From positions 124,001-188,000 of the IMG/VR virus record IMGVR_UViG_3300024336_000005: a stretch of DNA of 64,000 bases; one strand, 5' to 3'. The position numbers were made by a program, and so were the translations under genes. The first letter of the stretch is position 1; every line of letters begins with the position of its first letter. Shown here in pieces: positions 2,578 to 40,774 of the stretch. The notes under the pieces were generated by a model that did not search any database, was not told the origin of the DNA, and was given only the letters and a program-made list of their open reading frames with translations.

Positions 2578-3617
2578 GTAACTCTAAGTCTTTTGATGAC
2601 TATCTTATGTCTCCTCGGTATTCTGATATTGAATCAAGGAGTGAGGTTTCTCTGGAGACTTCTTTAGGGCCATATACCTTTAGTCTCCCTATTATCTCTT
2701 CTCCTATGGATACTATCACTAATGCTGAGATGGCAGCGGCGATGGCTGAGGCCGGAGGCTTAGGGATTGTTCACAGAGGACAAGAGGCTGCAGTACAGGC
2801 CCACGAAGTTGGCCTGGGAGTGGTGATAGCGCGCGAAAAAGGTGTAAAAGATCCTATCATTGGTGCAGCCATTGGCGTAAAGGTTGAAGATGTTGATAGA
2901 GCTGAAAGGCTTGTAGATGCAGGGGCTAAGATCCTTTGCATTGATGTCTGTCATGGACACCACATCAATGTGAAGCGTCAGATCAAAAGGCTGCAACATC
3001 TTAATACCACCATCATTGCTGGAAACATTGCCACCAGAAATGGTGCAATGTTTCTTGCAGACCAAGGGGTGGCTGGCATTAGAGTTGGCATTGGCAATGG
3101 TTCCATTTGTTCCACAAGACTGAACACTGGACACGGCGTTCCACAAGCAACAGCATTGATGCATGCCGCGTGGGGAGTGTCTGGAGTTATGGATAGTACC
3201 AGCCCACCAGAAGCCAGGCCTGCTCTCATCTCAGATGGTGGTTGTCGTAACGGAGGAGACATCGTTAAGGCCCTTGCGCTCGGTGCTGATATGGTGATGT
3301 TGGGTTCGATGCTTTCGGGTACATATGAAACCCCAGGCAACTGTGATGACGACGGTTACAAAGTGTACCGTGGCATGGCCTCTGAAGGAGCCCAGGCCGA
3401 CTGGGGCGGTGGAGTTAAGTCAGTGGAAGGGGTCACTGCTAAGGTGCGCTCCAAGGGGGCTGTAGGCCCCTTGTTGGACGCCCTTGCTGAGAATCTTCGA
3501 GCAGGGCTGTCTTACTCAGGGGCTAGAACCATTAAGGATCTTCAAGCATGTGCTGACCGAATCATTGTATCTCAATCATCACTGAGGGAAAGCGATACGC
3601 ATATTCGCTTCCAGTAA
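2574..3617 (+). CDS. IMP dehydrogenase / GMP reductase family protein (no CBS domain)
   Basis: SSPMDT, IDVCHGH, GIGNGSICSTR (catalytic Cys), SDGG, YRGMAS, EGV. Confidence 0.93.
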   Translation: MSNSKSFDDYLMSPRYSDIESRSEVSLETSLGPYTFSLPIISSPMDTITNAEMAAAMAEAGGLGIVHRGQEAAVQAHEVGLGVVIAREKGVKDPIIGAAIGVKVEDVDRAERLVDAGAKILCIDVCHGHHINVKRQIKRLQHLNTTIIAGNIATRNGAMFLADQGVAGIRVGIGNGSICSTRLNTGHGVPQATALMHAAWGVSGVMDSTSPPEARPALISDGGCRNGGDIVKALALGADMVMLGSMLSGTYETPGNCDDDGYKVYRGMASEGAQADWGGGVKSVEGVTAKVRSKGAVGPLLDALAENLRAGLSYSGARTIKDLQACADRIIVSQSSLRESDTHIRFQ

Positions 3618-3629
3618 TAAGACTGCGCA

Positions 3630-3685
3630 CTCCCAGTAAGGGAGAAGTAGGGTTGGCTGCGCTTGGACTGCGTCCAATGCTGGCC
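3630..3685 (+). ncRNA. repeated structured RNA motif, copy 1
   Basis: CTCCC-AGTAA-GGGAG hairpin, then GGC-TGCGC-[TTGGAC/GTCCAA]-TGCTG-GCC. Confidence 0.55.
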
Positions 3686-3750
3686 TGATAGTCATATAGG
3701 CAAAGGCCAGTCAGTTGAAGTCCTCGTGACAACACCGGGCTGGCTTTTGG

Positions 3751-3825
3751 GGTCCTCTAGCCAAACGGTCAAGGCAGCCGCCTGATAAGCGGCGATACCT
3801 GGTTCAACTCCAGGGGGGACTACCA
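3751..3825 (+). tRNA. tRNA-Ile(GAT)
   Basis: GCCGC-CTGATAA-GCGGC anticodon arm, CCTGG/CCAGG T-arm, CCA. Confidence 0.92.
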
Positions 3826-3861
3826 TCCAGCATTAGCTGGGACAAACATAAAGGAGAAAGC

Positions 3862-4059
3862 ATGTCGTCAAGGAACAGAGAGAATGATGCGACGATTAAG
3901 AGGTTGCAGCGAGTGTCGGATGTCCTCAAGCAGGAGATGAGGGAGATCCCCTTCTTGCCAAAGGACATCACGGACACTTTGAACGGTACCATCAGCTACG
4001 TAAAGCGTAGATGTGCCGCGCTAGGTCCAGTAGAAGAGGCATCTGACTCACCAGAGTAA
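3862..4059 (+). CDS. hypothetical protein
   Basis: RBS AAGGAG; 65 aa. Confidence 0.6.
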   Translation: MSSRNRENDATIKRLQRVSDVLKQEMREIPFLPKDITDTLNGTISYVKRRCAALGPVEEASDSPE

Positions 4060-4082
4060 GTGTCCAAATAGCTTTTGTCTTA

Positions 4083-4412
4083 CTCTTAGTGAAGAGGAGA
4101 CATGTAGCACCTAAACTGGCTCCCTAGTAGCCGAGAGTCGGCGGGTCGTTCAGTTTAGGTGCAGTAGTTACCGAGCCAGCAAAGTCATCGATCGTACGTC
4201 AACAAAGAAGAGCTAGTAGTATAGACTAGTAAGCTTCAGACGTCCGGCTCGAGACCCAGTCTGGCGGCCGGCGGAGGAGATGATCTCCGGCGCCGTGGGA
4301 CCGTACTTGGTCCGCCATGGTAACTACAACTGCAGCGAGGAGACATGTACATGATCCAGACCTGGTCACCAGCTCTTAGGGGCCCATAAGGCCTGACCTG
4401 GATGTCCATGTC
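4083..4412 (+). ncRNA. large multi-stem non-coding RNA candidate
   Basis: Perfect inverted repeats 4107-4118/4151-4162 and 4164-4172/4319-4327; also 4173-4177/4246-4250 and 4342-4347/4407-4412; no credible ORF. Confidence 0.55.
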
Positions 4413-4495
4413 GATAACGCTGTGGAGAACTACTTCTATATATGTCAAGTACTACAATAGGTCTAGAACTATTGGGCATAAAGAAGGGTAGTTCT

Positions 4496-5048
4496 GCGGG
4501 TGAAGTGTTTAGGTTGCACGTCTGGCTTCCTTCCAAACTTTCGCTGTTATTGGAATCCAAGCACTACGCTTGGAGGGCTACAATGAAAGTTTGCACTAAA
4601 TGCAATGAACAAAAGACACTAGAAAACTTTTCATGGAAAGATAAAAATAGAGGAAGAAAAGCTTCCGAATGTAAGAGTTGTCATAAAATAATGAGGTTGG
4701 CTTATTATCAAGCTAACAAAACAAAAGAAAGACAACGAGCAAATCATCGCAGGATGAATCTCAAAGCATGGTACAGGGACTTAAAGAAGACACTGTGCTG
4801 TCATAAATGCAGAGAGAGCCACCCTGCGATATTACATTTTCACCATAAAGTTTCTAACCAAAAAGAACTTGAAATATCTATAGCCATCAACCATGGATGG
4901 TCAAAAGAGCGCATTCTAAAAGAAATGAATAAATGCGAAGTTCTTTGTGCCAATTGTCATGCTAAGCATCATTGGGATGAAAGGTACGAATAGTGCTTTA
5001 CATTCCTCAACCCAGAAAGACAGAGTTCGATTCTCTGTACCCGCACCA
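4496..5048 (+). tRNA. tRNA, probably Gly(TCC), interrupted in the anticodon loop by an ~480 nt HNH-coding insert
   Basis: 5' half 4496-4530 (GCGGGTG, D-arm, TCTGG-CTTCC) pairs with 3' half 5010-5048 (AC-CCAGA, CAGAG-TTCGATT-CTCTG, TACCCGC-A-CCA). Confidence 0.8.
4583..4993 (+). CDS. HNH homing endonuclease-like protein inside the tRNA
   Basis: N-terminal CxxC..CxxC; CHKC..LHFHH..LCANCHAKHH; RBS GGAGGG; AT-rich. Confidence 0.85.
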   Translation: MKVCTKCNEQKTLENFSWKDKNRGRKASECKSCHKIMRLAYYQANKTKERQRANHRRMNLKAWYRDLKKTLCCHKCRESHPAILHFHHKVSNQKELEISIAINHGWSKERILKEMNKCEVLCANCHAKHHWDERYE

Positions 5049-5054
5049 TCCTTA

Positions 5055-5143
5055 CTCTGAGAAAAGAGGAGGAGAACATTAATATATATAAGGCCAATCT
5101 TGCGCTTTTTCAATGCTCGATCGAGTTCTTATATATATTAATG
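5055..5143 (+). ncRNA. repeated structured RNA motif, copy 2
   Basis: CTCTG-AGAA-AAGAG; TGCGC (5101) and TGCTC (5114) lie inside a perfect 16 bp inverted repeat 5077-5092/5128-5143. Confidence 0.55.
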
Positions 5144-5250
5144 GTAATAAGTTTAGATCAGACATCTTTTTAGCGCTCAGATAGATTGTCCGAGCTCGAA
5201 GAAAGAAAAATAATCTGAATACACAAGTGGAACTTAAGATAACCACTTGT

Positions 5251-5337
5251 GGGATGTTAGCCGAATTGGTTGAAGGTACCGGACTCTTAATCCGGAGAGT
5301 GAAAGCTCCATTCTGGGTTCGAACCCCAGGCGTCCCA
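5251..5337 (+). tRNA. tRNA-Lys(CTT) with a long class II-type variable arm
   Basis: CCGGA-CTCTTAA-TCCGG; variable arm GAGT-GAAA-GCTC; CTGGG/CCCAG T-arm; no encoded CCA. Confidence 0.85.
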
Positions 5338-5381
5338 CTTAAGTCCATACTCTAGGAATAGAGATACTCTTTCGGGAGTAT

Positions 5382-5453
5382 CCGCCCTTAGCTCAGTTGG
5401 TAGAGCATCTGGTTGAAGCCCAGTGGTCTCTGGTTCGATTCCAGAAGGGTGGA
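5382..5453 (+). tRNA. tRNA-Phe(GAA)
   Basis: CCGCCCT/AGGGTGG acceptor, loop TTGAAGC, TTCGATT T-loop. Confidence 0.9.
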
Positions 5454-5479
5454 CAAGTACTGAAACGCAAAGGATGAAA

Positions 5480-5740
5480 ATGAAGATTAAAGAACTGATT
5501 GAAGCCCTGCAGGGAAAAGATCCAGAAGCTGTTGTTGTAATCCATGGCTACGAGGGTGGCTTTCATGAGGTGGCAAGGACATTAAATGGAGGAATCTTTG
5601 TTGATCTCCATAGAGGTGATGCTTATTATGGAGAGCACGAATTCTGTTCAGAGGAATATGCTGAGGGAGCGAACAGCAAAGCTGTCCTTCTCCTCCATGA
5701 CTGTCCAAAGGATGAAGATGATTACACAGGAAACTCATAA
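5480..5740 (+). CDS. hypothetical protein
   Basis: MKIKELIEAL start after AGGA; the track's GTG start lies inside tRNA-Phe. Confidence 0.6.
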   Translation: MKIKELIEALQGKDPEAVVVIHGYEGGFHEVARTLNGGIFVDLHRGDAYYGEHEFCSEEYAEGANSKAVLLLHDCPKDEDDYTGNS

Positions 5741-5749
5741 GGATAAATA

Positions 5750-6859
5750 ATGTCGCACACAACTCTTTTTCATAAGGGCAAGGCCAACAAGCTGTACTCA
5801 TGGACCATTTGGACTGAAGGTGACGAAATTGTTACCGAACATGGGACTGCAGAGGGCAAGAAGCAGGTCTCACGTAAGAAGGCCACGCCAAAGAACGTAG
5901 GCAGATCCAATGAGACCACAGCAGAGGAGCAGGCCGTGCTTGAAGCACAGGCCATGTGGACCTTCAAGAAGGAACGCAAGTACTCAGAGTCTCCTCATGA
6001 GGCAGAGCAAACACTCTTCCTCCCCATGTTGGCACAGGACTTTGAGAAGAAGAAGTCTAAGGTTAGCTACCCCGTAGATGTTCAGCCTAAGCTGGATGGA
6101 GTTCGCGCTCTTGCTACTTGGGAGGGAGAAGAGGTTAAGCTCTACTCTCGTTCAGGTAAGGAGTGGAACATTCCTCATCTAGCAAGACAGCTTGAGGCAG
6201 TCTTGCCTAAGGATAGAATTGTTGACGGTGAGATTTACATCCATGGTGTGAGCTTCCAGGCAGTGACTCGACTGGTTAAAAAGCATAGACCAGGAGAGAG
6301 TGAGAAGCTTAATTACTTCATCTACGATATGGTGATGAAGGGGGCAGAGAACACAGAGATTGGCTGGCTTCCTCGTAAGCATCAGCTGGCTGAGTTCTTT
6401 GGGTCCTTTGATGAGAGCTTGGCTCCCAACCTCATTCATGTTCAGAGTAATGATGCCCCAAGTGAAGAGGAAGTCTATTATCTACAGCAGAAGCTAGTAG
6501 AAGAAGGCTTTGAAGGTGCCATCGTAAGGGTCCTCAATGGATTCCCTTACATTTATGGCTACCGCTCAGCTGGTCTGCTCAAAGTAAAGACCTTCTCGGA
6601 TGAAGAGTTTAGAGTGGTTGGGCATACCATGGGAGTAGGCAAGTTCGCTAATACCCCTACGTGGGAGTGTATCACCAATGAGGGGAGGCCTTTCCGGTGC
6701 CTGTCCAAGGGAACGAAGGCCGAACGAGAGGCCATGGGAGCCAATGCTGAGTCCTACTATGGGCAGATGCTAAAGGTTCGCTTCTTTGAGAAGTCAGAAG
6801 ATAATATCCCAAGGTTTCCAATCGGTATAGGCTTTAGAGACCCCAGGGATATGTCATGA
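5750..6859 (+). CDS. ATP-dependent DNA ligase with an N-terminal WGR-like domain
   Basis: Motif I QPKLDGVR, VDGEIY, EGFEGAIVR, LLKVK. Confidence 0.93.
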   Translation: MSHTTLFHKGKANKLYSWTIWTEGDEIVTEHGTAEGKKQVSRKKATPKNVGRSNETTAEEQAVLEAQAMWTFKKERKYSESPHEAEQTLFLPMLAQDFEKKKSKVSYPVDVQPKLDGVRALATWEGEEVKLYSRSGKEWNIPHLARQLEAVLPKDRIVDGEIYIHGVSFQAVTRLVKKHRPGESEKLNYFIYDMVMKGAENTEIGWLPRKHQLAEFFGSFDESLAPNLIHVQSNDAPSEEEVYYLQQKLVEEGFEGAIVRVLNGFPYIYGYRSAGLLKVKTFSDEEFRVVGHTMGVGKFANTPTWECITNEGRPFRCLSKGTKAEREAMGANAESYYGQMLKVRFFEKSEDNIPRFPIGIGFRDPRDMS

Positions 6860-7011
6860 AGTACATCTTCTTGACTGTAGTCCAGGTCATATTGGCCTTG
6901 GCCATCTGCGAAACATTGGTACAATTTGCATGGGTTATGGTAATGGGATCAATAGGTTGGCACACATACGACCTAATAAGCACTAGAATAGTAGGGGTTA
7001 AGGATGAGTAG
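6856..7011 (+). CDS. small membrane protein
   Basis: ATGA overlap with the ligase stop; hydrophobic MKYIFLTVVQVILALAIC... Confidence 0.4.
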   Translation: MKYIFLTVVQVILALAICETLVQFAWVMVMGSIGWHTYDLISTRIVGVKDE

Positions 7012-7255
7012 AATAGAATACTCACAGTGTGAGTTAGAAATTAATACCGGCAGTGGTATTATCACAACTACATCATGGCTACCTACCTATCACAAGAACG
7101 TGAAGATTGTGAGAGGCGTTCATGTGAGGCTGGAAGAAGATACGGAAGAGCGCTGGTGGACGGTGGTGTCAGTAGGAGCAACAAAGATCTCAGACAAGAC
7201 TGCATTCAAGCAGGCTCGACGACACGCAAACTACATAGCCTCAGTAGATATTTAA
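7004..7255 (+). CDS. hypothetical protein
   Basis: 83 aa ORF in the operon run. Confidence 0.55.
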   Translation: MSRIEYSQCELEINTGSGIITTTSWLPTYHKNVKIVRGVHVRLEEDTEERWWTVVSVGATKISDKTAFKQARRHANYIASVDI

Positions 7256-7264
7256 GAAGACATA

Positions 7265-7355
7265 CTCCCGGAAGGGAGGAGTCAATCTTAATTTGTCCTC
7301 CGCTTGGATGCATTAGAAATGCACCCAATGTTGCTAGGCAACCCAATGCTCGGAC
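7265..7355 (+). ncRNA. repeated structured RNA motif, copy 3
   Basis: CTCCC-GGAA-GGGAG-GAG; GTCC-TCCGC-TTGG...CCAA-TGCTC-GGAC. Confidence 0.55.
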
Positions 7356-7472
7356 GTCCTTTGCTTGGCAAGCCAAGGCTAGGACTGGATCATTGGGCGG
7401 AGGCTTAACCTTACCAAAGGGCACCAAAAATATATAGGTGTGGTTGCTAATGATTAGCGACCGTAAGGTTAA

Positions 7473-7547
7473 TGCGGAATAGAGAAGCCAGGTTATCTCG
7501 CTAGCCTCATAAGCTGGAGATCGCAGGTTCAAATCCTGCTTCCGCTA
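7473..7547 (+). tRNA. tRNA-Met(CAT), initiator-like
   Basis: T1/T72 mismatch, A11-T24, TTCAAAT T-loop, loop CTCATAA. Confidence 0.88.
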
Positions 7548-7549
7548 CA

Positions 7550-7620
7550 TTCCCAAGATAAGAAAATCAAATGCAATCGCGGTTAACTTTTGTAGTTTTT
7601 GCTTAGGCTTATCTTGGGAA
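7550..7620 (+). repeat. 13 bp perfect inverted repeat right after tRNA-Met
   Basis: TTCCCAAGATAAG 7550-7562 / CTTATCTTGGGAA 7608-7620. Confidence 0.7.
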
Positions 7621-7630
7621 CATTTTCTTA

Positions 7631-7699
7631 CTCCTAGAGAGGAGGAGAAAGACTGTCCTGCGCTCCTCTTCCACTACGTGGTCGCGGATGCTCGGAGTC
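7631..7699 (+). ncRNA. repeated structured RNA motif, copy 4
   Basis: CTCCT-AGAG-AGGAG-GAGA; GACT..CC-TGCGC-TCC...GGA-TGCTC-GG-AGTC. Confidence 0.55.
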
Positions 7700-7701
7700 A
7701 G

Positions 7702-7796
7702 TTGCTTGTTAACACAGGTTTACCTCAGGCTACGGAGCTTGCTCAATGCTTGAGCTTCGCCCCTAGGCCTCCAGGTAAACCACAGTAAACAAGCAA
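7702..7796 (+). ncRNA. long irregular hairpin
   Basis: 7702-7710/7788-7796, 7717-7725/7773-7781, apical GCTCAA/TTGAGC. Confidence 0.5.
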
Positions 7797-7823
7797 GCGA
7801 CCTAAGGCTTGCCTTGGGGTCGG

Positions 7824-7897
7824 GCCCGCTTAGCTTAATGGATTAAAGCGACGGTCTACGAAGCCGTTAAATCTAGGTTCGAATCCTAGAGTGGGTG
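7824..7897 (+). tRNA. tRNA-Arg(ACG)
   Basis: ACGGT-CTACGAA-GCCGT; CTAGG/CCTAG T-arm. Confidence 0.9.
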
Positions 7898-7907
7898 CAT
7901 AGTCTAA

Positions 7908-7975
7908 CTCTCAGAAGAGAGGAGACGTACATAACGACAGCCCCTGCGCTCAACTACGTTGATGCTCATGTCTGT
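7908..7975 (+). ncRNA. repeated structured RNA motif, copy 5
   Basis: CTCTC-AGAA-GAGAG-GAGA; TGCGC-[TCAAC/GTTGA]-TGCTC. Confidence 0.55.
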
Positions 7976-8041
7976 CTGTCGGATTCCCCAAGGGTAACCC
8001 GACGATCATATAGACTTATGAACTTCGGTCTATGGGTTTAT

Positions 8042-8121
8042 GCCAGCGTGGCTCAGTGGCGACAGCACCGATCTTGTAAGTCGGTATCTCAACATCGTAG
8101 GTTCGATTCCTACCGCTGGCA
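8042..8121 (+). tRNA. tRNA-Thr(TGT) with a 12 nt variable loop
   Basis: GCCAGCG/CGCTGGC acceptor, CCGAT-CTTGTAA-GTCGG. Confidence 0.88.
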
Positions 8122-8136
8122 CATAAGGAGAGAAAT

Positions 8137-8235
8137 ATGTTCTTGTTAATTGGTTTGCTTTGTCTCATTGCAGGAGCCTACAAGGTTGCACTGCTGTTTG
8201 TAATCCTTTCTGTATTCCTTGGGGAATGGCAATGA
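8137..8235 (+). CDS. small hydrophobic peptide (32 aa)
   Basis: RBS AAGGAG; MFLLIGLLCLIAGAYKVALLFVILSVFLGEWQ; stop overlaps the next ATG. Confidence 0.45.
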   Translation: MFLLIGLLCLIAGAYKVALLFVILSVFLGEWQ

Positions 8236-8546
8236 AGCATCCAATAAGGCCCAGCCCGAGAAGGGTTACCATTTCTCCTTACAATTCTTTAAGATGGGCA
8301 TTCAAAGAATCAGGATTATCCTTTGAAGAATTCCTTGATGCAGACTTAGTTACACGTGACTGTGGTTGCTACCATGACTGTAGCTGTACTGGAGTGGACC
8401 TTCTAGTAGAGACTGATGACCACAAAGAAGCCATGAGTAAATACAACAAAGTTTTACTTGAGTGGCATCTTTGGGAGGAAGGGGAAATGGAAAGGAAGGA
8501 GAGGCTCCAGCTTGAGGAGCTCAAGGCTAAATATGAGGCAAATTAA
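8232..8546 (+). CDS. hypothetical protein
   Basis: ATGA-coupled ORF. Confidence 0.55.
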   Translation: MKHPIRPSPRRVTISPYNSLRWAFKESGLSFEEFLDADLVTRDCGCYHDCSCTGVDLLVETDDHKEAMSKYNKVLLEWHLWEEGEMERKERLQLEELKAKYEAN

Positions 8547-13263: not shown

Positions 13264-14356
13264 GCCTAAGCCTGAATTTCTTAAGAAGTTCGAAGCTCAA
13301 GAGTGGGCGGTGCACCTTGGAGAAATTCCAGAGACTTTAGTAAGGAACTCAACCCTCTCCATCTTTGGAGATGGTAAGTATCTCACAAGGTCAAATCCCA
13401 TTGGGACTTTTACGCGCAGAATTGAGCGTATGGATATTCCTACATTGGATCATGGACCCGACCCAAGCTTCTCCTTGAAGCTACCTAAGGTGCCTGCTGC
13501 TATTCTGATGAAGCAGGTGAGCTTCTACCGTGAGGTAATGAAGCTCTTTAATGATGCAGAAGCCTACTCCATTGTCATGTATGACACTGTAGAAGAGCAA
13601 TACTTTTTGGTCATTCCTGAGCAGACCATCTCTAAGGCGCACGTTAAGTACGATCAGCCTGAGCTAAGGAAGAAGTACCCTTCCGACCGCTACATTGAAG
13701 TTATCTCTGCTCATAGTCACAACTCTATGAATGCATACTTCTCTCCCCTTGATGACAAGGACGAGAAGGGAGATATTCTATACATGGTGATGGGTAAGTT
13801 GAACCAAGAGGTTCCAACCTATTGCATCCGTGCAAATGTGGCTGGTGCGGAGTGCGTCAAGCTTCCCCTTGAGGATCTGTTTGATCTTTCTGAAGAGAAC
13901 TGGGCAGAGCTTTCTCCCTATTGGGAAGACCTTCATGACAGCACTTGGGTCGAGCAGCTCCATGTTCGAGGGCCTGTTGTTAGTGCTCACTCTCAGTTTG
14001 ATCAGATGCTTAAGACCTTTCAGGGCTCTCGCCCAAGAAGGCCTTTCACTGGTAGAACAACGGGAAGCCAGATGGACTTCTTTAACCAGACCGAAAGTGA
14101 AGTGGGGAGCGAAGGCTCTGAGCAAAAGGAATTCATTACAATCGCCTGTGCCTTGATTAAGGACGCTAGAAGCTTACCTCCTGAGCAGGTTATGTTTAAT
14201 CTGATATCGAATCTCTTAGAGAGGGGATACGCAGAGGACATTCATGCTGCCATTGTTGCTTGTGATCATGTTGAAGAATTCCAGGCGATGGAAAAAGATG
14301 ATTGGGAATTAGATATGAAATTGCGTATGGAGTTAGATGATGGCTGGTATTCTTAA
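13241..14356 (+). CDS. JAB/MPN+ metallopeptidase (PRTRC protein A type) with a C-terminal extension
   Basis: EAYS...SAHSHNSMNAYFSPLDDKDE = E..HxH..S..D. Confidence 0.88.
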   Translation: MDFRTPIEPKPEFLKKFEAQEWAVHLGEIPETLVRNSTLSIFGDGKYLTRSNPIGTFTRRIERMDIPTLDHGPDPSFSLKLPKVPAAILMKQVSFYREVMKLFNDAEAYSIVMYDTVEEQYFLVIPEQTISKAHVKYDQPELRKKYPSDRYIEVISAHSHNSMNAYFSPLDDKDEKGDILYMVMGKLNQEVPTYCIRANVAGAECVKLPLEDLFDLSEENWAELSPYWEDLHDSTWVEQLHVRGPVVSAHSQFDQMLKTFQGSRPRRPFTGRTTGSQMDFFNQTESEVGSEGSEQKEFITIACALIKDARSLPPEQVMFNLISNLLERGYAEDIHAAIVACDHVEEFQAMEKDDWELDMKLRMELDDGWYS

Positions 14357-15503
14357 TTTCGAGGGAATTGATCCACTCCTAAAGCTTTCTTCAAAGCTTG
14401 GAGTTGCACTTGATAGCGCACAGGATTTGCATCCTGTCTTCCGAATCGCAGGGATTGTTTCTCAGACGGGAACGTTGCTGGACTATGCCGTCAAGCTTGT
14501 TCCCGATCGGCCAGAGACTAAGACGACTGTGGTGCAGAACTACCGAAACGTACATACCTTTACGGCACAACAGCCGACCATAGTTATGGTAGGTTGTGGC
14601 GGTACGGGCAGTCACTTGCTTCCAAATATTCTACAGTATGCAATCACCAAGGCGGCTCAACAGACTGTTACCCCTCCCTGTGTCATCATTATCGATGGAG
14701 ACGGAGTGGAAGAGAAGAACCTAATTCGACAGAGGTTCACTCAAGCGGACCTTGGAGAGAACAAGGCTATTGCCTTGTCTCGTCGCTACAGTGCAGTGTT
14801 TGCTACAAAGATTAAGGCTGTAGACACTTACCTTGAGGACTCAAAGCAGCTGATTGGCCTTATCAAGGACGAAGCCCCAGCGGTTGGTCCTATCATTTTA
14901 GTAGGGGCAGTGGATAATCACAGAGCTCGTGCTATTTTGTGGGACACCTTCTTGAGCGAGACCCAGAGGGAGATCTGGTGGGTTGACGCAGGAAATGAGT
15001 CCTGGCATGGTCAGGTCATTTCTGGGTGCAGGAATGTACAGACAAAGGGAGATTCCCATTGGGCTGCCGCAGGCATCGGAGATGATATTGCTTCTGTTGA
15101 TCTGCCTTGCTTCTTCGATGAGTATCCAAAGGAGTTCATGAAGATTGGCGGTACGCCAACGACTCCACAGAATACTTGTGCTGCAGTGGCTGAGGAGGAC
15201 CCTCAGACCATTCATGCAAACTCATTGTCAGCCCAATGTGCTTCAAACATTATCACTCAGATTCTTGAGGGTGAAGTTAGAGTAATGGGATTGAACTTTG
15301 ATGCAAAGACTGGTCAGGTTAAAGCCAAGATTCTTACACGAGTGAACATCGCCACCGCATACGTTGACATGAAAAACTCAAGAACTTCTCTTCGGGGATT
15401 CCTTGGGGACCTATGCTCGTGGAAGGGGAAGTCTGAACCGGCGACTCTCTTCCCGGGACTATACAAAAAAGCAAAGGTAGAGGATCTCTATACGGCTATT
15501 TAA
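14337..15503 (+). CDS. E1/ThiF-family adenylating enzyme (PRTRC ThiF type)
   Basis: GCGGTG, DGDGVEEKNLIRQ, GENKA, AVDNHRAR, WVDAGN, NTCA..Q..N. Confidence 0.92.
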   Translation: MMAGILNFEGIDPLLKLSSKLGVALDSAQDLHPVFRIAGIVSQTGTLLDYAVKLVPDRPETKTTVVQNYRNVHTFTAQQPTIVMVGCGGTGSHLLPNILQYAITKAAQQTVTPPCVIIIDGDGVEEKNLIRQRFTQADLGENKAIALSRRYSAVFATKIKAVDTYLEDSKQLIGLIKDEAPAVGPIILVGAVDNHRARAILWDTFLSETQREIWWVDAGNESWHGQVISGCRNVQTKGDSHWAAAGIGDDIASVDLPCFFDEYPKEFMKIGGTPTTPQNTCAAVAEEDPQTIHANSLSAQCASNIITQILEGEVRVMGLNFDAKTGQVKAKILTRVNIATAYVDMKNSRTSLRGFLGDLCSWKGKSEPATLFPGLYKKAKVEDLYTAI

Positions 15504-16357
15504 TGTACAGACAGTATAAAATAAAGAAGCGCAAAGGAGGGTTCAGAACTATTACTGAACCCTCTGACTCTTTAAGTGAGATGCTGTCTTACCTTAAGGT
15601 GCACTTAGACGCCCTGCCCATGAGTGAACATGCTCATGGCTTTATTGTGAATAAGAGTATCATTACAAATGCCCTGCCGCACCGGAACAAAAGATATGTC
15701 CTTAACCTAGACGTTAAGAACTTCTTTCCCAGTGTTAGAAGGCCTCTGATGATGGAAAAGTTAGCTCCCTTCTTTAATGAAGGGAAGCTTCCTCTAGACA
15801 TCAGAGATTGGATTCATGAGTTGTGCTTCTTTGAAGGAGCGCTACCTCAGGGCTCACCAACCTCTCCTGTTCTTTCTAATCTCTATATAGCAGAGATAGA
15901 CGAAGAGCTAGTCAGAGTAGCAGGGGAGATGGACTGTACTTATACTAGGTACGCTGATGATATGACCTTTTCAGGAGGAGACGTCCTGAAAAGTGAGAGG
16001 GATAAGGTGGCGCGCGAGGTCGATCTTCTCTTGCAGAGGATTGAACTAAAGCTCCACCCACGTAAGGTAAAGCTTATGCCATACTATCAGAGACAGATTG
16101 TCACTGGCATTGTGGTAAATAATGAAAAATTGACGCTACCTAGATGGTACAAAGAGGAACTCTTCCTTGCTACAAAGGGAGAGGATCCGTCTACCTTCGA
16201 TGAACAATTCAGGGGTGTTCTTGAGTATGTTCGTTCGGTAGATTCACAATTCTATAAAAAAATGTGCAACCATATGATTGCACCAAAGGAGAATGAAGAT
16301 GGCAACACTTCCAGAGTGGATCACAGAGGTCCGATTTTATGCAACGACTCCCAGTAG
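15503..16357 (+). CDS. retron-type reverse transcriptase
   Basis: KKRKGGFRTI, NALPH (region X NAxxH), LDVKNFF, LPQGSPTSP, YTRYADD, QIVTGIVVN (region Y VTG); TAATG coupling to E1. Confidence 0.9.
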   Translation: MYRQYKIKKRKGGFRTITEPSDSLSEMLSYLKVHLDALPMSEHAHGFIVNKSIITNALPHRNKRYVLNLDVKNFFPSVRRPLMMEKLAPFFNEGKLPLDIRDWIHELCFFEGALPQGSPTSPVLSNLYIAEIDEELVRVAGEMDCTYTRYADDMTFSGGDVLKSERDKVAREVDLLLQRIELKLHPRKVKLMPYYQRQIVTGIVVNNEKLTLPRWYKEELFLATKGEDPSTFDEQFRGVLEYVRSVDSQFYKKMCNHMIAPKENEDGNTSRVDHRGPILCNDSQ

Positions 16358-26390: not shown

Positions 26391-26678
26391 ATGGCAGTTT
26401 ATACAGGAGAGGTTAGGGGAGACTTTGATTCAAGGGTTGACCTGGTCAAATGGGACAACTACGGACTTGAATTTAAGTTTGCTGCCTTGAATGATGAGGC
26501 TTATGTTATCAAGCAAGATGCAAAGGGGAAATGGGTGGCAGGCGAGTGGGTGGTAACAGAGGATAAGCTAAGCCAGCTCTTGCGTTCTCTTATCAGAGGC
26601 ATGGGCTTTGGTAGATTTAGGATGGGCAAGGGTAGGAACACCACATTCATAGGAATAGTAGAAGTAGAAAATGTCTAA
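26391..26678 (+). CDS. hypothetical protein
   Basis: 95 aa ORF. Confidence 0.55.
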
Positions 26679-27294
26679 AGATGATGCCCTCGGGCTCTTG
26701 ATTAAGTCTTGCGAAAAGCAATTTGGTGAAGGTGCGGTCTTTGACCTCTCCTCATCTACTGTGCCCAAGGTTCCTAAGGTAAGCTTTGGGTCTATTAAGA
26801 TAGACATTGCTGCAGGTGGTGGTGCCGGGAAGGGTCGTATCATTGAGGTCTATGGTCCTGAAAGCTCAGGTAAGACGACCCTGTGTTTGAATCTCCTTAG
26901 AGAGATTCAAAATGATCCAGATTATGTTGCTGAAGGCAGACGACCTCTATTTATTGATGCAGAGCATGCCCTTGACCTAGAGTATGCTACTAATTGCATT
27001 GGAGTAGACCCTAATAATTTGTTGGTGGCCCAGCCCGATGTTGGTGAAGATGCGCTAGAGATAGCTGACATCTTCATTAGGAGTGGGAAGGTCTCGGCGG
27101 TCTTTGTCGACTCTGTTTCAGCACTACTCCCCAGAGCAGAGCTTGAGGGAGAGATGGGCAAGTCTCATGTTGGACTGCTTGCTAGGCTTATGTCGCAGGC
27201 TCTGCGTAAGTTGGTAGGACTTTGCCATAAGACTGGTACGATTCTTGTCTTTACTAACCAAATTCGTATGAAGATTGGTGTGATGTTTGGAAAT
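26671..27294 (+). CDS. recA: RecA, exon 1
   Basis: [48 protein letters not shown]. Confidence 0.96.
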
Positions 27295-28225
27295 CAACTT
27301 TTAGCTGCATAAACTAAGACTACATCAGTTATTGATCCGCTTAGGAGGATCTGCTGATGATTATAAATGGTTATAAATTCAATAAAATTGATGAATCTCA
27401 TGTTGAGTACTTAAAGGCTCACTATCAGGATAAACTAACGGATCTTTGTGAGGGCCTTGGCCTTTCCGATGAAACAGTTTATCGAATGATAAAAGCACTG
27501 GGCATCCAGCGAGAGAGGCATTGGAAGAGATCTATACCTCGGAATAAAGAGGCAGAAGATCTAATGAGAGATCCATATCTCTCACATGTAAAAATTGCAA
27601 AGAAGTACAATTGTACACCGGAAGCAGTTGCAAAGCGACGGACTGACCTTGGCGTTACAGTCAGAAGGAATATGTGTTCCACTCAGCTAGAAGATAGGAT
27701 TCAACTTATCCTAGAAGAGATTGGGCTAGCATATATCCCACAACGAAACCTAGACAAATGGTCAATAGACTTTTATCTGGGTTGCAATTTTTACATAGAC
27801 GTTCATGGTTCATGGGCACATTCAAAACCTAAGATTGTCGAAAGAGACAAGCGCAAGGCAAAATGGATGGAAGACAAGGGATTTAAATACCTTGTCATTC
27901 GTGAATCGGATATTGAAGAAGCCAAAAATAAGATCTTAGATTTTGCATCTGGGTTTCCCTTAGCGGTAACGTTAAGTAAAAAACCTTGTGAACTGCTACC
28001 CGCAGGTGTCGCCTCTAGGCGGCTAACGGTGAAACCCTTCATAATGGGCAATACCGTGCCAAGCCTCATAAATGAGGAAGGTGTAGAGACTATCGAAAGC
28101 ACATCGAAAGATGGGAGTGAGTAGAGTAGGGATAGAGATAGGTACTATCCCCAAGCGCAAGGCTCCTCGTTTGAGGATGATGATATAGTCCGAGCCATAG
28201 AGATGATAAATCTATGGGAGTCTCG
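27295..28225 (+). mobile_element. group I intron in recA
   Basis: Exon ends in U and intron ends in G; joins GN to PETT in frame; Q GCAATACCGTGCCAAGC, R GAGACTA, S GATATAGTCC. Confidence 0.9.
27357..28124 (+). CDS. intron-encoded Vsr-like (EDxHD) homing endonuclease
   Basis: RBS AGGAGG; HTH-like N-terminus; QLED, IDFY, DVHG..H, ERD. Confidence 0.8.
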   Translation: MIINGYKFNKIDESHVEYLKAHYQDKLTDLCEGLGLSDETVYRMIKALGIQRERHWKRSIPRNKEAEDLMRDPYLSHVKIAKKYNCTPEAVAKRRTDLGVTVRRNMCSTQLEDRIQLILEEIGLAYIPQRNLDKWSIDFYLGCNFYIDVHGSWAHSKPKIVERDKRKAKWMEDKGFKYLVIRESDIEEAKNKILDFASGFPLAVTLSKKPCELLPAGVASRRLTVKPFIMGNTVPSLINEEGVETIESTSKDGSE

Positions 28226-28825
28226 CCAGAGACGACTAGTGGAGGCAACGCTCTGAAGTTTGCTGCCTCTCAGAGGATTGACATTCGTCGCAAGACAAGT
28301 GCAGCAGATACTGAGAAGGATGCAGATGGAAATGTATTCCGCATCCCGACGACGGTCAAGTTCGTAAAGAACAAGCTGTTTCCTCCCTTCCGAGTTGCTC
28401 ACATTGATATGGAAATGAATGTTGGCATCAACAGAACAGCAGAAATCTTGGACCTTGCCGCTGACAACGACATAATTCTTAAGTCAGGGGCATGGTACGA
28501 ATACGTTGACCCCTCCCGAACGGAACTCTTGTTAAAGCTTCGTCAGCATGAGGATGTAAAGGCTTTGATCCAAGAGATTAAAGCCGCTCCAAAGGATTTT
28601 AATGTCGTTCCGGAAAGTATCAAGGAAGGAGCTCGAAAGATAGGTCCCCTTCTTGATGCCTTGGAGTTCGATGACAAGGGCTGGAGGGTTCAAGGGCGTT
28701 CTTCTGCTATAGAGGCCCTAGGAGAGAGACCAGAGTTATTGGAGGAGCTTAGAGTTCACATTCGTGAAATCTATTTCCCAACCAGTAGCCCACAAGCGGA
28801 AGTTTCAGACGATATTCCGTTTTAA
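28226..28825 (+). CDS. recA: RecA, exon 2
   Basis: PETTSGGNALKFAASQRIDIR, KNKLFPPF, SGAWY. Confidence 0.95.
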   Translation, partial: PETTSGGNALKFAASQRIDIRRKTSAADTEKDADGNVFRIPTTVKFVKNKLFPPFRVAHIDMEMNVGINRTAEILDLAADNDIILKSGAWYEYVDPSRTELLLKLRQHEDVKALIQEIKAAPKDFNVVPESIKEGARKIGPLLDALEFDDKGWRVQGRSSAIEALGERPELLEELRVHIREIYFPTSSPQAEVSDDIPF

Positions 28826-35786: not shown

Positions 35787-36178
35787 AGAACAATACAAAC
35801 TGCACCATAGGCATCCTAGAAGAGGATCAAAGCGTTAGCGTTATCTATTGCCACTGGGATGGCTATCTTGATGCGAACGGTGAGCGTCTCTGGAGGTTCT
35901 ACTATGAAGAAAGTCATATTAGAGACCTGCTTGAGGGAGGAGATATCACATCTCTTGGCGCTAGCCATAAGGTAAGCGTTTACTATCATAAGGACTTCCA
36001 AGAGCCACTTAAGGTTGCTCGTGTTTATGATACTTCTCTTGAGATGGTTGAGGCTGAGGGACGTAGGTTTAATTATCTCTATTGCATTCGCTCTGGCGAA
36101 TGGTTCTTTTCAATGTGGTCGTCTAATGAATGGAAGAATTTAAAAGATGCAAACTTCAAGACCTCTGGTCCATTATGA
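35783..36178 (+). CDS. hypothetical protein
   Basis: YCHWDGY motif. Confidence 0.65.
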   Translation: MKNNTNCTIGILEEDQSVSVIYCHWDGYLDANGERLWRFYYEESHIRDLLEGGDITSLGASHKVSVYYHKDFQEPLKVARVYDTSLEMVEAEGRRFNYLYCIRSGEWFFSMWSSNEWKNLKDANFKTSGPL

Positions 36179-36923
36179 TGGTCCCATTGAATGGATCAAT
36201 GAAGGCCGTGTGATTCTGTATGGAATCCACGGGTCTCATCTTTATGGGACAAATATTGAGACCTCTGATGAGGACTATAAGGGTATTGTTGTCCCTCCTA
36301 GAGTGTACCGCCAGGGCTTTTCTAAGACCTTTGAGCAGGTTATCCAAGAGGGATGTGAGCTTGAGTATGTCATTTATGATATCCGTAAGTTCTTTAAGCT
36401 TGGGGTTAAGTGTAACCCCAACATCTTAGAGCTTCTCTACTCTAAGTCCTTCTTGCACTCCACTGAGGGAGGAAGACTGCTGGCTGAGAACAGGGATGCG
36501 TTTCTTTCTCAGCGTGCAATCTCTTCATACAATGGATATGCTCTGTCTCAGTTGAAAAAGATGGAGACCTATAGGGCTGCCAATCCAGAGAGAGCTAGGT
36601 TGCGGGAGTTGTATGGATATGACACCAAGTTTGCCATGCATTTGATTCGACTGTTAAGGGTCTGCAACGAGATGTTGACAGAGGGAACCATTAACGTGTT
36701 CCGTAAGGATGCAGAGCAGCTGATAGAGATCAGGAGGGGTGGATGGTCCTTGGCTCGTGTTCATAAGGTGGTCCAAGACCTTGAGGCCAGGAACTCTGCA
36801 TTGGCGACTACAACGTCTCTGCCTAAGGAGCCAGACATCGACTTCTTAGAGTCTTTGATGTCTGATATAATTGAGATTACGGAGTGCTCGGTTGCCTCCA
36901 AGGATGAGATAAATGTTTTTTGA
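36147..36923 (+). CDS. Pol-beta-superfamily nucleotidyltransferase
   Basis: GSHLYG..SDEDYKG, NPNILELL, YDTKFAMHLIRLL. Confidence 0.85.
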   Translation: MQTSRPLVHYDGPIEWINEGRVILYGIHGSHLYGTNIETSDEDYKGIVVPPRVYRQGFSKTFEQVIQEGCELEYVIYDIRKFFKLGVKCNPNILELLYSKSFLHSTEGGRLLAENRDAFLSQRAISSYNGYALSQLKKMETYRAANPERARLRELYGYDTKFAMHLIRLLRVCNEMLTEGTINVFRKDAEQLIEIRRGGWSLARVHKVVQDLEARNSALATTTSLPKEPDIDFLESLMSDIIEITECSVASKDEINVF

Positions 36924-37443: not shown

Positions 37444-37586
37444 TTGGAATTTTGTCAAAGAGGAGATACTTGAGGTCTTGGACAACAATGGGGTGCATGA
37501 TGGGACCCTTGCTGGACTAGAAAATAAGGTCCAGGTGTTCATCAATAAGCTCGAGAGGACCTTTAGGCCTGAAGCAGGAGAGCCAG

Positions 37587-37823
37587 ATGACGACACTGAC
37601 TCTGACTGGTAAGGTCGCAAAGATAGAGAAGGCAGGAAAGTGGGTGGCTTTTGTTATAGCTGGCCGAACTGCTTGTAAAGTAATAATGAAGGATGCCTCT
37701 GCTAAGGAGGCACTAGAATCCATCAAAGTTGGGTCAGAAATTGTTGCAACATCTAGCAAGTTCGCGTGTGAAGGTCACACGGTAAAGCTTTGGACTGATC
37801 TATGCATGTTCTTACCAGATTAA
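37587..37823 (+). CDS. small OB-fold-like hypothetical protein
   Basis: RBS GGAG; alternating beta pattern. Confidence 0.4.
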   Translation: MTTLTLTGKVAKIEKAGKWVAFVIAGRTACKVIMKDASAKEALESIKVGSEIVATSSKFACEGHTVKLWTDLCMFLPD

Positions 37824-37840
37824 CATAGTGAGTAGAATAA

Positions 37841-40084: not shown

Positions 40085-40107
40085 AAATAAAACTATAGGA
40101 GATTAGC

Positions 40108-40727: not shown

Positions 40728-40774
40728 GGTATGATGTCAGAATGGAGAGGTCTCAGAGAGAAGGAGAGGTTCAA

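What the first reader, a model, noticed from the sequence alone, without database searches (positions are those of the whole stretch)
3630..7975. Dispersed, covarying two-part RNA motif repeated through the tRNA cluster (candidate new ribozyme or processing element)
Seen: module A is CWWA-CTCNN-(A/G)GNN-NNGAG, usually followed by GAG, with compensatory stems (CTCCC/GGGAG, CTCTT/AAGAG, CTCCT/AGGAG, CTCTC/GAGAG, CTCTA/TAGAG) at 3630, 4083, 5055, 5350, 7265, 7631 and 7908. In five copies it is followed by module B, T(G/C)CGC-[variable hairpin]-TGCT(C/G), a roughly 5x5 internal loop that is closed by a clear stem in most copies. Copies start within about 25 nt after a tRNA end, a stop codon or a trailer hairpin. 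Inference: a loop/receptor-docked RNA that cuts or punctuates the polycistronic tRNA transcript, or a protein-binding decoy. Module A resembles my recollection of hatchet P1 (C|UUACUG-UGAGAAU), but module B does not clearly match any ribozyme I know.
Basis: partly seen in the sequence, partly recalled or inferred. Interest (0 to 1): 0.85.

Follow-up and report, generated by a model that had tools for sequence, protein, structure and literature searches.

The report
Conserved RNA punctuation motif in phage tRNA array
An uncultivated jumbo phage and four relatives begin most of the long non-coding leaders in their tRNA gene cluster with the same small covarying RNA hairpin, often followed by a second conserved box; this motif is absent from Rfam 15 and most likely marks where the long tRNA transcript is cut, but it is not a hatchet ribozyme.

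Summary
Module A is CWWA, a 5-bp stem, an RGNN loop, the closing stem, then RAG. It sits at all seven stated sites. A covariance model built only from four other phages recovers six of the seven as the top six hits in the 64-kb window.

In total there are 27 copies in five related metagenomic phages. All lie on the coding strand, each at the start of a structured leader that ends in a tRNA. They begin 3-8 nt after a tRNA 3' end, or shortly after a stop codon. The stem covaries: four of five pairs show double changes, and 0 of 500 shuffles reach the observed score.

Module B (UGYGC, 8-30 nt, UGCUC) is too short to be significant alone. It follows A in 12 of 27 units, against 1% of random windows.

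Leaders are otherwise unalignable between phages, so A and B are selected islands. Rfam 15 gives no ribozyme hit in the window or the relatives, and the defining hatchet features are not met. Ten units have A without B, and the A-to-B spacing varies from 11 to 55 nt, so A works alone.

Best reading: A is a lineage-specific processing signal read by a protein RNase. B is an accessory binding box. RNase P makes the leader's 3' end. A new self-cleaving class remains possible, at roughly 10-15%.

The parts
3626..3647 (+). Module A copy 1 (CGCA CTCCC AGTAA GGGAG AAG). It starts 9 nt after the stop of the IMPDH/GMP-reductase-like gene and heads the leader of tRNA-Ile.
   Evidence: R2 hit at 17.6 bits. 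Orthologous copies sit in the same position in L006, L008, L009 and L090.
3655..3685 (+). Hairpin carrying module B copy 1 (B = 3658-3682: TGCGC, TTGGAC TGC GTCCAA, TGCTG), closed by GGC/GCC.
   Evidence: The inner stem covaries among orthologues.
4079..4099 (+). Module A copy 2 (CTTA CTCTT AGTG AAGAG GAG). It starts 20 nt after the stop of a 65-aa ORF and heads a roughly 400-nt structured spacer with no module B.
   Evidence: R2 hit at 32.1 bits, E 2.8e-5. The spacer folds with z = -5.8.
5051..5071 (+). Module A copy 3 (CTTA CTCT GAGAAA AGAG GAG). It starts 3 nt after the CCA of the interrupted tRNA at 4496-5048.
   Evidence: R2 hit at 20.4 bits.
5077..5143 (+). Long AT-rich hairpin with module B copy 2 at its tip (B = 5101-5118: TGCGC TTTTTCAA TGCTC).
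   Evidence: It is the best B-model hit in the window, at 16.9 bits.
5346..5366 (+). Module A copy 4 (CATA CTCTA GGAA TAGAG ATA). This is a weak, minimal unit with no B. It starts 8 nt after the tRNA at 5251-5338 and runs straight into the hairpin 5364-5381, which abuts tRNA-Phe.
   Evidence: R2 gives only 11 bits. Fold.
7261..7281 (+). Module A copy 5 (CATA CTCCC GGAA GGGAG GAG). It starts 6 nt after a stop codon and heads the leader of tRNA-Met.
   Evidence: R2 hit at 30.4 bits. Folds.
7627..7647 (+). Module A copy 6 (CTTA CTCCT AGAG AGGAG GAG). It follows the trailer hairpin 7550-7620 downstream of tRNA-Met.
   Evidence: R2 hit at 31.5 bits.
7652..7702 (+). Hairpin with module B copy 3 (B = 7659-7693).
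7904..7924 (+). Module A copy 7 (CTAA CTCTC AGAA GAGAG GAG). It starts 6 nt after tRNA-Arg(ACG).
   Evidence: R2 hit at 31.4 bits.
7936..7976 (+). Hairpin with module B copy 4 (B = 7945-7967: TGCGC, TCAAC TAC GTTGA, TGCTC).
3702..3748 (+). Leader-terminal hairpin just upstream of tRNA-Ile (3751). Analogous hairpins lie at 5223-5250, 5364-5381, 7405-7471, 7798-7822 and 8009-8041.
   Evidence: A stable hairpin ends within 2 nt of tRNA +1 in 13 of 23 leaders of this clade, against 8 of 160 tRNAs in other phage loci.
3751..8122 (+). The tRNA genes served by the leaders: 3751-3825 Ile, 4496-5048 interrupted tRNA, 5251-5338, 5382-5454 Phe, 7473-7548 Met, 7824-7898 Arg, 8042-8122 Thr.

Best explanation
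The element is a cis-acting RNA module specific to one phage lineage. It organises the polycistronic transcript of the phage's tRNA cluster.

Each long non-coding leader in the cluster has the same layout:
- It starts with module A: unpaired CWWA, a 5-bp pyrimidine/purine hairpin with an RGNN tetraloop, then RAG.
- It usually continues with a long hairpin whose tip carries module B. B is UGYGC, then 8-30 nt, then UGCUC. G4 and C5 of the first block pair with G2' and C3' of the second, around a Y.U mismatch and a bulged U.
- It ends in a hairpin that abuts nucleotide +1 of the tRNA.

Proposed mechanism, all inferred:
1. A is an autonomous recognition signal for a protein endoribonuclease. Candidates are a host RNase E/G-type enzyme, which cuts single-stranded A/U-rich RNA next to a stem-loop, or an unidentified phage factor.
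2. The enzyme cuts in or just before CWWA.
3. That cut frees the upstream tRNA (or mRNA) with a trailer of only a few nucleotides. Exonucleases could not otherwise trim past the stable leader.
4. RNase P cutting at the downstream tRNA makes the leader's 3' end.
5. The excised leader is therefore capped by hairpins at both ends.
6. B is an accessory sequence-specific binding box for a protein or a tertiary contact. It is not needed for A to work.

Shown: the motif exists, its stems covary, it is conserved as islands in otherwise diverged leaders, it is strand-specific, and its placement is consistent.

Inferred: that it is cleaved, where, and by what.
For: - There are 27 copies in five syntenic phage loci (ligase 54-61% identical). 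All are on the + strand, and each stands at the head of a non-coding stretch that ends in a tRNA.
- Thirteen copies start 3-8 nt after a tRNA 3' end, and one more 17 nt after. Most of the rest start shortly after a stop codon or a trailer hairpin.
- Stem covariation: 92.6% of cells are paired, and four of five pairs show double changes across 31 cells. No shuffle out of 500 reaches this, and slid controls give 49-75% paired.
- Eight cells are G.U pairs, which would be A.C mismatches on the other strand. The hairpin is therefore maintained only in the sense transcript.
- C(-4), A(-1), the first stem C and the loop G are invariant in all 27 copies. The closing stem G is invariant, and the following A and G nearly so, in the 18 copies whose loop length allows exact alignment.
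- Model R1 finds nothing else below E 0.3 in 1.05 Mb that includes 57 other phage loci.
- Model R2, built without the window, recovers six of the seven window copies as the top six hits.
- blastn aligns only the tRNAs and the ligase between these phages. The leaders are otherwise diverged, so A and B are conserved islands.
- B follows A within 90 nt in 12 of 27 units, against 1.06% of random windows. Its inner stem covaries.
- tRNAs that are directly followed by another tRNA or by an ORF have no A. This fits A being needed only where a long structured leader would otherwise remain as the 3' trailer.
- Terminal hairpins abut tRNA +1 in 13 of 23 leaders, against 8 of 160 controls.
- A sigma-70-type consensus scan finds promoter-like and terminator-like sites no more often than in shuffles of this region. 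This is consistent with, but does not prove, one long transcript.
Against: - There is no transcript or cleavage data of any kind.
- No RNase gene was found among the 60 window ORFs scanned against Pfam. About 140 kb of the 204-kb contig was not examined.
- The CWWA segment fits the RNase E preference only loosely. U sits at the third position in 17 of 27 copies. The invariant C and A point to a more specific reader than RNase E.
- Some long spacers in relatives lack A, for example L006 8855-8940 and 14640-14766.
- Orthologous copies are not independent, so the statistics overstate the number of independent events.
Confidence: 0.45

Rival explanations
1. A new class of self-cleaving ribozyme. 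A would act as a P1-like hairpin with the scissile bond at its 5' side (C|WWA). RAG would be a conserved linker, and the B-bearing hairpin would be the catalytic or docking domain. Cleavage would release the upstream tRNA's 3' end, as proposed for theta ribozymes.
For: - The position just downstream of tRNA 3' ends resembles that of theta ribozymes (tRNA within 5 nt of the cleavage site, PMC10879173).
- The gross layout resembles hatchet: a 5' hairpin with conserved nucleotides after it, then a long hairpin with a conserved internal loop (PMC6561176).
- Conserved unpaired nucleotides flank a covarying stem.
- No known family explains the motif.
Against: - Ten of 27 units keep A but have no B.
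- The A-to-B spacer varies from 11 to 55 nt, and the stem under B from 3 to about 45 bp. This is unlike a compact catalytic core.
- The minimal unit at 5346-5381 is only 36 nt.
- No Rfam ribozyme model hits at E<=10 in the window or E<=1 in the relatives.
- No pseudoknot or long-range covariation linking A to B was seen.
Confidence: 0.12
2. The leaders are themselves the product. They would be a family of stable small RNAs, about 100-280 nt long, excised from the tRNA transcript. The A hairpin would cap the 5' end and the terminal hairpin the 3' end, with the 3' end made by RNase P. B would be a binding site that titrates or recruits a host or phage protein, acting as a decoy or sponge. This overlaps with the best explanation and differs mainly in what selection acts on.
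For: - Hairpins sit at both ends of the leaders.
- B is a sequence-invariant helical box at hairpin tips. Only the stem above it covaries, which is typical of protein operators.
- There are several paralogous copies per genome.
- From general knowledge, not tested here: T4 encodes stable RNAs in its tRNA cluster, and RNase P makes the 3' end of MALAT1 at a tRNA-like structure.
Against: - Apart from A and B, the leaders have no conserved sequence between phages.
- Their lengths range from 36 to more than 400 nt.
- B is missing from 10 of 27 units.
- No partner protein has been identified.
Confidence: 0.2
3. A signal acting during transcription. A (with or without B) would be a nut/put-like site that modifies RNA polymerase, or would otherwise protect the untranslated, Rho-sensitive tRNA segments from premature termination.
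For: - A stands at the start of each untranslated stretch.
- It is formally similar to lambda nut: a short conserved single-stranded box ending in CUUA, followed by a 5-bp hairpin with a purine-rich loop. This comparison rests on own knowledge and is a lead only.
- UGCUC is shared with rrn boxA.
- The heavy structure of the spacers would disfavour Rho loading.
Against: - A recurs after tRNAs inside stretches that are already untranslated, up to seven times in 4.3 kb. That is redundant for a processive modification.
- The sequence upstream of CWWA is not conserved, so there is no full boxA.
- The UGCUC of B is not followed by UUUA.
- No N-like or Q-like gene was identified. The conserved 65-aa ORF next to tRNA-Ile has no Pfam hit.
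Confidence: 0.08
4. A DNA-level repeat. Module A would be a boundary repeat of mobile tRNA cassettes, comparable to the PeSL cassettes of T4-type phages, or a simple relic of cassette duplication with no RNA function.
For: - The tRNA content differs between the five phages, while A sits at cassette boundaries.
- The genome is rich in homing endonucleases and in split genes.
Against: - Compensatory stem changes and G.U pairs that work only on the sense strand.
- All 27 copies are on the coding strand.
- A and B are retained as islands while the surrounding leader has diverged beyond alignment. This argues for selection on the transcript rather than recent duplication.
Confidence: 0.05

Closest known systems
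Theta ribozymes (minimal HDV-like ribozymes next to phage tRNAs; PMC10879173)
   Same: Both are cis elements placed a few nucleotides downstream of phage tRNA genes. Both are proposed to deal with the tRNA 3' trailer, and both are phage-specific.
   Different: Theta ribozymes have the nested double-pseudoknot HDV fold. Module A is a plain 5-bp hairpin with unpaired flanks. No HDV-family Rfam model hits. A also follows ORF stop codons, and it is tied to what lies downstream (a long leader), not to every tRNA.
Hatchet ribozyme (Rfam RF02678; PMC4604424, PMC6561176)
   Same: Both have a 5' hairpin with conserved nucleotides immediately 3' of it, followed by a longer hairpin with a conserved internal loop. 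The first six letters, C UUACU, match the env10 hatchet. Both are known only from metagenomic, phage-like DNA.
   Different: - In hatchet, UUA is paired inside a 3- or 6-bp P1. Here it is unpaired in front of a 5-bp stem.
- The hatchet linker is three conserved nucleotides (C20, A21, A22 in the env10 structure) leading directly into P2. Here it is RAG plus a spacer of variable length.
- The conserved hatchet L2 segments (U28-G31, G63-G66, A73-A75) have no counterpart here.
- The covariance model gives no hit.
Protein-read processing signals in phage polycistronic RNAs (T7 RNase III sites, RNase E sites next to stem-loops, T4 RegB GGAG sites; own knowledge)
   Same: Both are short structured signals repeated between genes of one long transcript. 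In both, conserved sequence sits on or next to a hairpin and divides the RNA into units.
   Different: The sequence and shape do not match any of these. The stem is too short for RNase III. The invariants are stricter than for RNase E. GGAG is absent from several copies, for example GACAG-GAG, GGCAG-AAG and AAGGG-AAG.
AGNN tetraloop hairpins recognised by yeast Rnt1p (own knowledge)
   Same: The loop consensus is RGNN with an invariant G at the second position (AGUA, AGAA, AGAG, GGAA and others).
   Different: Rnt1p substrates need a stem of about 14-16 bp, and the enzyme is eukaryotic. Here the stem is 5 bp. This is a resemblance in loop type only.
RNase P-defined 3' ends of non-tRNA RNAs (MALAT1/mascRNA; stable RNAs of the T4 tRNA cluster; own knowledge)
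   Same: In both, a structured RNA lies directly upstream of a tRNA or tRNA-like fold and ends in a hairpin at the RNase P site.
   Different: No stable leader RNA has been shown here, and the leaders are far less conserved than those RNAs.

Membership tests
Hatchet ribozyme (RF02678) | Match to the family covariance model | tested here: not met
   cmscan against Rfam 15 gave no hatchet hit. This covered gathering thresholds on the whole window, E<=10 on 3400-8400, and E<=1 on the four related loci.
Hatchet ribozyme (RF02678) | P1 of 3 or 6 bp whose first pair includes the nucleotide 3' of the cleavage site (PMC4604424, PMC6561176) | tested here: not met
   The stem is 5 bp in nearly all of the 27 copies. 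It is preceded by 3-4 unpaired nucleotides (WWA) that have no conserved pairing partner in RAG.
Hatchet ribozyme (RF02678) | Three highly conserved nucleotides link P1 directly to P2 | tested here: not met
   RAG is conserved, but it is followed by a variable spacer before the next helix. The A-to-B distance is 11-55 nt.
Hatchet ribozyme (RF02678) | Asymmetric internal loop L2 between P2 and P3 carrying most of the 13 conserved nucleotides | tested here: not met
   Module B (UGYGC...UGCUC) has a different sequence and is near-symmetric. It is absent from 10 of 27 units.
Hatchet ribozyme (RF02678) | Mg2+-dependent self-cleavage giving 2',3'-cyclic phosphate and 5'-OH ends | not testable with these tools
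   This needs a transcription and cleavage assay.
HDV-like / theta ribozymes | Nested double pseudoknot, with P1 starting at +1 and its strands separated by the P2 and P3 strands, and a catalytic C in J4/2 | tested here: not met
   No HDV-family Rfam hit. A is a simple hairpin with a 4-nt loop, so its two strands are not separated by other helices.
HDV-like / theta ribozymes | A tRNA ends within about 5 nt upstream of the element | tested here: inconclusive
   Thirteen of 27 copies start 3-8 nt after a tRNA 3' end. The others follow ORF stops or hairpins.
CRISPR repeat / Cas6 substrate or solitary-repeat mimic | Near-identical repeats at regular spacing, or a match to a known repeat family | tested here: not met
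   Copies differ in stem sequence and spacing is irregular. The only CRISPR-DR hit is a sub-threshold chance match at 7443-7461, outside any A copy.
Lambda-type nut site (boxA + boxB) | A conserved boxA (CGCUCUUUA-like) upstream of the hairpin | tested here: not met
   Only C-W-W-A is conserved. Positions further upstream are tRNA or ORF ends and vary freely.
New motif defined here (A module) | C-W-W-A, a 5-bp covarying stem starting with C and ending with G, an RGNN loop, then RAG, on the sense strand at the head of a tRNA leader | tested here: met

The most novel reading that the evidence does not exclude
Module A, with B as a helper where present, is a previously unknown small self-cleaving ribozyme class, or the substrate half of one. 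It would sever phage tRNA 3' trailers. This would be a third architecture, after HDV-like and hatchet, that cuts at its own 5' edge.
Probability: 0.12. Interest if true: 0.9.

Novelty: new variant of a known kind. Interest (0 to 1): 0.6.

Why it matters
How phages mature their own tRNA arrays is poorly understood, especially at the 3' ends. The only phage-specific cis elements described so far for this step are theta ribozymes.

This finding gives a second, structurally unrelated candidate. It is a 21-nt covarying hairpin signal with strict flanking nucleotides, plus an accessory box, conserved across a clade of uncultivated jumbo phages.

- If a protein reads it, it defines a new RNase specificity. 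That would be a compact, portable punctuation tag for multi-RNA transcripts, of the kind used in tRNA-gRNA arrays.
- If it cuts itself, it is a new ribozyme class.

Either way it is a well-delimited RNA family ready for curation and a simple bench test.

Tried and rejected
- **Known Rfam families.** Only tRNAs pass. The sub-threshold hits (Plastid-ycf2 on the tRNA antisense strand, CRISPR-DR12, snoRNAs) are chance.
- **Near or distant DNA relatives among GenBank phages.** Only the tRNA genes match.
- **Exact A+B pattern in IMG/VR.** Only the window's own contig carries true copies. The three other loci are chance matches inside coding DNA with no tRNAs.
- **The same pattern in JGI metagenomes.** After filtering for stem complementarity only ordinary RBS-type hairpins remained, so the scan was uninformative.
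- **CTTACTC...GAGGAG...TGCGC in 185,579 GTDB species genomes.** Twelve chance matches, ten of them not even complementary. Within the reach of that exact pattern, the motif was not found in bacterial or archaeal genomes.
- **Eighty IMG/VR loci with more distant ligase homologues (51% identity or less).** Many have tRNA clusters, but none has module A. L091 (53%) also lacks it.
- **Module B as a stand-alone family.** It is not distinguishable from noise.
- **Sigma-70 promoters or intrinsic terminators at the units.** They are not enriched.
- **Translation start at the SD-like GGAGGAG.** There is no conserved start codon or ORF downstream.
- **Pairing of CWWA with RAG, of RAG with the CUC of UGCUC, or of the A loop with B loops.** By eye there is no consistent complementarity or covariation.
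- **A full Watson-Crick helix for the B core.** The G2-C5' position breaks in 3 of 10 copies without compensation.
- **A trans-acting RNase among window ORFs.** None was found.

Full report
**What the region is.** The window is part of a 204-kb IMG/VR contig, IMGVR_UViG_3300024336_000005. It has no close relative among GenBank phages. Nearly all genes are on the + strand. The replication genes are phage-type and partly split by homing elements.

Between 1.6 and 8.2 kb lies a tRNA cluster. It holds seven tRNAs by ARAGORN and Rfam, plus an eighth that is interrupted by a 479-nt insert. A few ORFs are interspersed, including an ATP-dependent DNA ligase.

- The strict pattern ACTCNNRGNNNNGAG occurs 8 times in 64 kb against 1.7 expected. 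None of 100 shuffles reaches that count. Six of the hits are on the + strand between 4082 and 7921.
- Four copies are followed by a clear module B: TGCGC, 8-25 nt, then TGCT(C/G).

**Relatives.** An exact A+B pattern scan of IMG/VR found true copies only in the window's own contig. The ligase gene inside the cluster gave the way in.

- Its closest homologues (54-61% identity) lie in syntenic loci: an IMPDH-like gene, a tRNA cluster, then the ligase.
- These loci come from four other metagenomic assemblies: L006, L008, L009 and L090.
- All four carry module A in the same kind of place, and most carry module B.
- More distant ligase-bearing phages often have tRNA clusters of their own but lack the motif. 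This covers 80 IMG/VR loci at 51% identity or less, plus L091 at 53%.

**Anatomy of module A.** The 27 copies align almost without gaps.

- Invariant in all 27 are C at -4, A at -1, C as the first stem base, and G as the second loop base.
- The closing G is invariant, and the following A and G are nearly so, in the 18 copies whose loop length allows exact alignment.
- The 5-bp stem is paired in 92.6% of cells.
- Four of the five pairs change on both sides, for example CUCCU/AGGAG, CUGUC/GACAG, CCGUC/GAUGG, CUACU/AGUAG and CCCUU/AAGGG. That makes 31 such cells in total.
- No shuffle out of 500 reaches the observed covariation, and sliding the 3' partner drops pairing to 49-75%.
- Eight cells are G.U, so the helix exists only in the sense strand.

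Two covariance models tested specificity:

- A model of all 27 copies finds nothing else below E 0.3 in 1.05 Mb of phage DNA.
- A model built only from the other four phages ranks six of the seven window copies as the six best hits in the whole window, with filters off.
- The copy at 5346 (ATA instead of GAG) is the weak one.

**Anatomy of module B.** B is two similar pentamers, UG(C/U)GC and UGCU(C), around 8-30 nt that usually form a hairpin.

- The last GC of the first block can pair with the GC of the second. This leaves a Y.U mismatch, and in the long forms a bulged U.
- In the short form (TGTGCGACGTRGTTGCKC in L008 and L009) the same GC/GC pairs close a 5-bp hairpin.
- The core never varies, so its pairing cannot be tested.
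- The three pairs directly above it covary.
- B normally sits at the tip of a stem of 3 to about 45 bp.
- With only about ten fixed bases, B is not significant on its own in 64 kb.
- It lies within 90 nt downstream of A in 12 of 27 units under a strict pattern, against 1.06% of random windows from the same loci.

**What the units look like.**

- Every A heads a non-coding stretch that runs to a tRNA.
- Thirteen copies begin 3-8 nt after the 3' end of the preceding tRNA, and one more 17 nt after. Most of the rest begin shortly after a stop codon or a trailer hairpin.
- tRNAs followed at once by another tRNA, or by an ORF with its ribosome-binding site, have no A.
- Leaders range from 36 to more than 400 nt and fold strongly. 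For example, 4060-4500 has z = -5.8.
- Leaders typically end in a hairpin that abuts tRNA +1. This holds for 13 of 23 leaders here, against 8 of 160 tRNAs in other phage loci.
- Between phages, blastn aligns only the tRNAs and the ligase. In the five orthologous pre-tRNA-Ile leaders, the conserved blocks are A and B.
- A and B are therefore islands under selection in otherwise free-running sequence.

**What it is not.**

- *Any known Rfam family.* Rfam 15 gives only tRNAs above threshold. Nothing from any ribozyme family appears at E<=10 in the window region or at E<=1 in the four related loci.
P1 length and register differ. The linker is not a fixed three nucleotides leading directly into P2. 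The conserved L2 nucleotides are absent.
- *HDV-like or theta ribozymes.* The nested pseudoknot fold (PMC10879173) cannot be drawn on a plain hairpin with a 4-nt loop.
- *A translation start.* There is no conserved start codon after the SD-like purines.
- *A sigma-70 promoter or intrinsic terminator*.
- *A CRISPR-like array.*
- *A host-genome element.* The exact pattern scanned was not found in GTDB species genomes.

**How it most likely works.** Three facts shape the model:

1. A is autonomous. Ten of 27 units have no B, and the A-to-B distance varies from 11 to 55 nt.
2. A is tied to the presence of a long, stable leader downstream, not to tRNAs as such.
3. Leaders are closed by hairpins at both ends.

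I infer that A is a cleavage signal at the 5' border of each leader. Without a cut there, RNase P processing of the next tRNA would leave the upstream tRNA with a 100-300-nt hairpin-rich trailer that exonucleases cannot remove. With a cut, only a few nucleotides remain.

A 21-nt signal with invariant unpaired nucleotides on both sides of a covarying stem is what protein-read RNA sites look like. An RNase E/G-type site (a single-stranded W-rich segment next to a stem-loop) is the nearest generic model, but the strict invariants suggest a more specific reader. B, a sequence-invariant box at hairpin tips, looks like an operator for a protein or a tertiary contact.

None of the cleavage steps is shown. 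No RNase gene was found among 60 window ORFs, and two thirds of the genome were not examined.

**Rivals.**

- A new self-cleaving class remains possible, at about 0.12. Position and gross layout fit, but the modularity and variable spacing argue against it.
- The leaders may themselves be stable small RNAs or decoys, at about 0.2. This is compatible with the main model.
- A nut/put-like transcription signal (0.08) and a DNA-level cassette repeat (0.05) fit the data less well.

**Verdict.** This is a real, conserved, covarying two-module RNA motif. It is confined, as far as these collections show, to a small clade of uncultivated jumbo phages, and it is not in Rfam. Punctuation of the tRNA transcript is the best-supported role. 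The hatchet idea is rejected. Catalysis is open and cheaply testable.

Noticed in passing
window 4496-5048: A tRNA is interrupted in its anticodon loop by a 479-nt insert that carries an HNH-like ORF (4583-4993). ARAGORN in intron mode calls it tRNA(UCA). The junction is ambiguous, because TCC occurs at both borders, and the intact orthologue in L090 (1043-1118) is tRNA-Gly(UCC). There is no Rfam group I intron hit, and little room for a ribozyme core beside the ORF.
   Followed up: partly
window 4100-4495: A roughly 400-nt non-coding spacer between module A copy 2 and the interrupted tRNA folds far better than shuffles (441-nt fold, z = -5.8). It contains no module B and no Rfam match.
   Followed up: partly
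window 14337-16354 (also L009 19390-21128): A small reverse transcriptase ORF (RVT_1, 284 aa) lies directly downstream of a ThiF-like ORF. The same pair is conserved in the related TARA phage. No template, variable repeat or retron RNA was looked for.
   Followed up: no
window 39092-45356: The DNA polymerase III alpha gene is in pieces. The PHP, NTPase, finger and HHH/OB parts are separate ORFs. An HNH endonuclease ORF lies between them, and an intein/LAGLIDADG segment sits in the finger part.
   Followed up: no
window 26671-28822: recA is split into two ORFs (26671-27309 and 28214-28822), with an unannotated 255-aa ORF between them. This may be an intron or a homing-endonuclease insertion.
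   Followed up: no
L008 3006-3083, 3365-3439; L009 607, 1397, 8208, 9323: ARAGORN reports several tRNAs with 6- or 8-nt anticodon loops in the related phages. Rfam scores them as tRNAs. One (L008 3006-3083) also gives a weak tmRNA-model match.
   Followed up: no
window 5251-5338: The tRNA called Lys(CUU) is 88 nt long with a long variable arm, which is unusual for a lysine tRNA. The L006 counterpart is a normal 76-nt tRNA.
   Followed up: no
window 3862-4059 and L006 7617-7820, L008 1775-2071, L009 8326-8559, L090 766-966: A small basic ORF (65-98 aa) is conserved directly after tRNA-Ile inside the cluster in all five phages. It has no Pfam hit. This is a speculative candidate partner for the RNA motifs.
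   Followed up: partly
window 36147-38839: An RlaP-family RNA-repair nucleotidyltransferase ORF (36147-36920) and a DHH/DHHA1 phosphoesterase ORF (37841-38839) lie near each other, separated by a DHFR ORF. They may relate to RNA or tRNA metabolism.
   Followed up: no
L006 8480-8570: A run of short hairpins with similar CUACG-type loops lies inside one long leader. The same loop type (C-UAC-G) recurs in the hairpin inside module B in several units.
   Followed up: no
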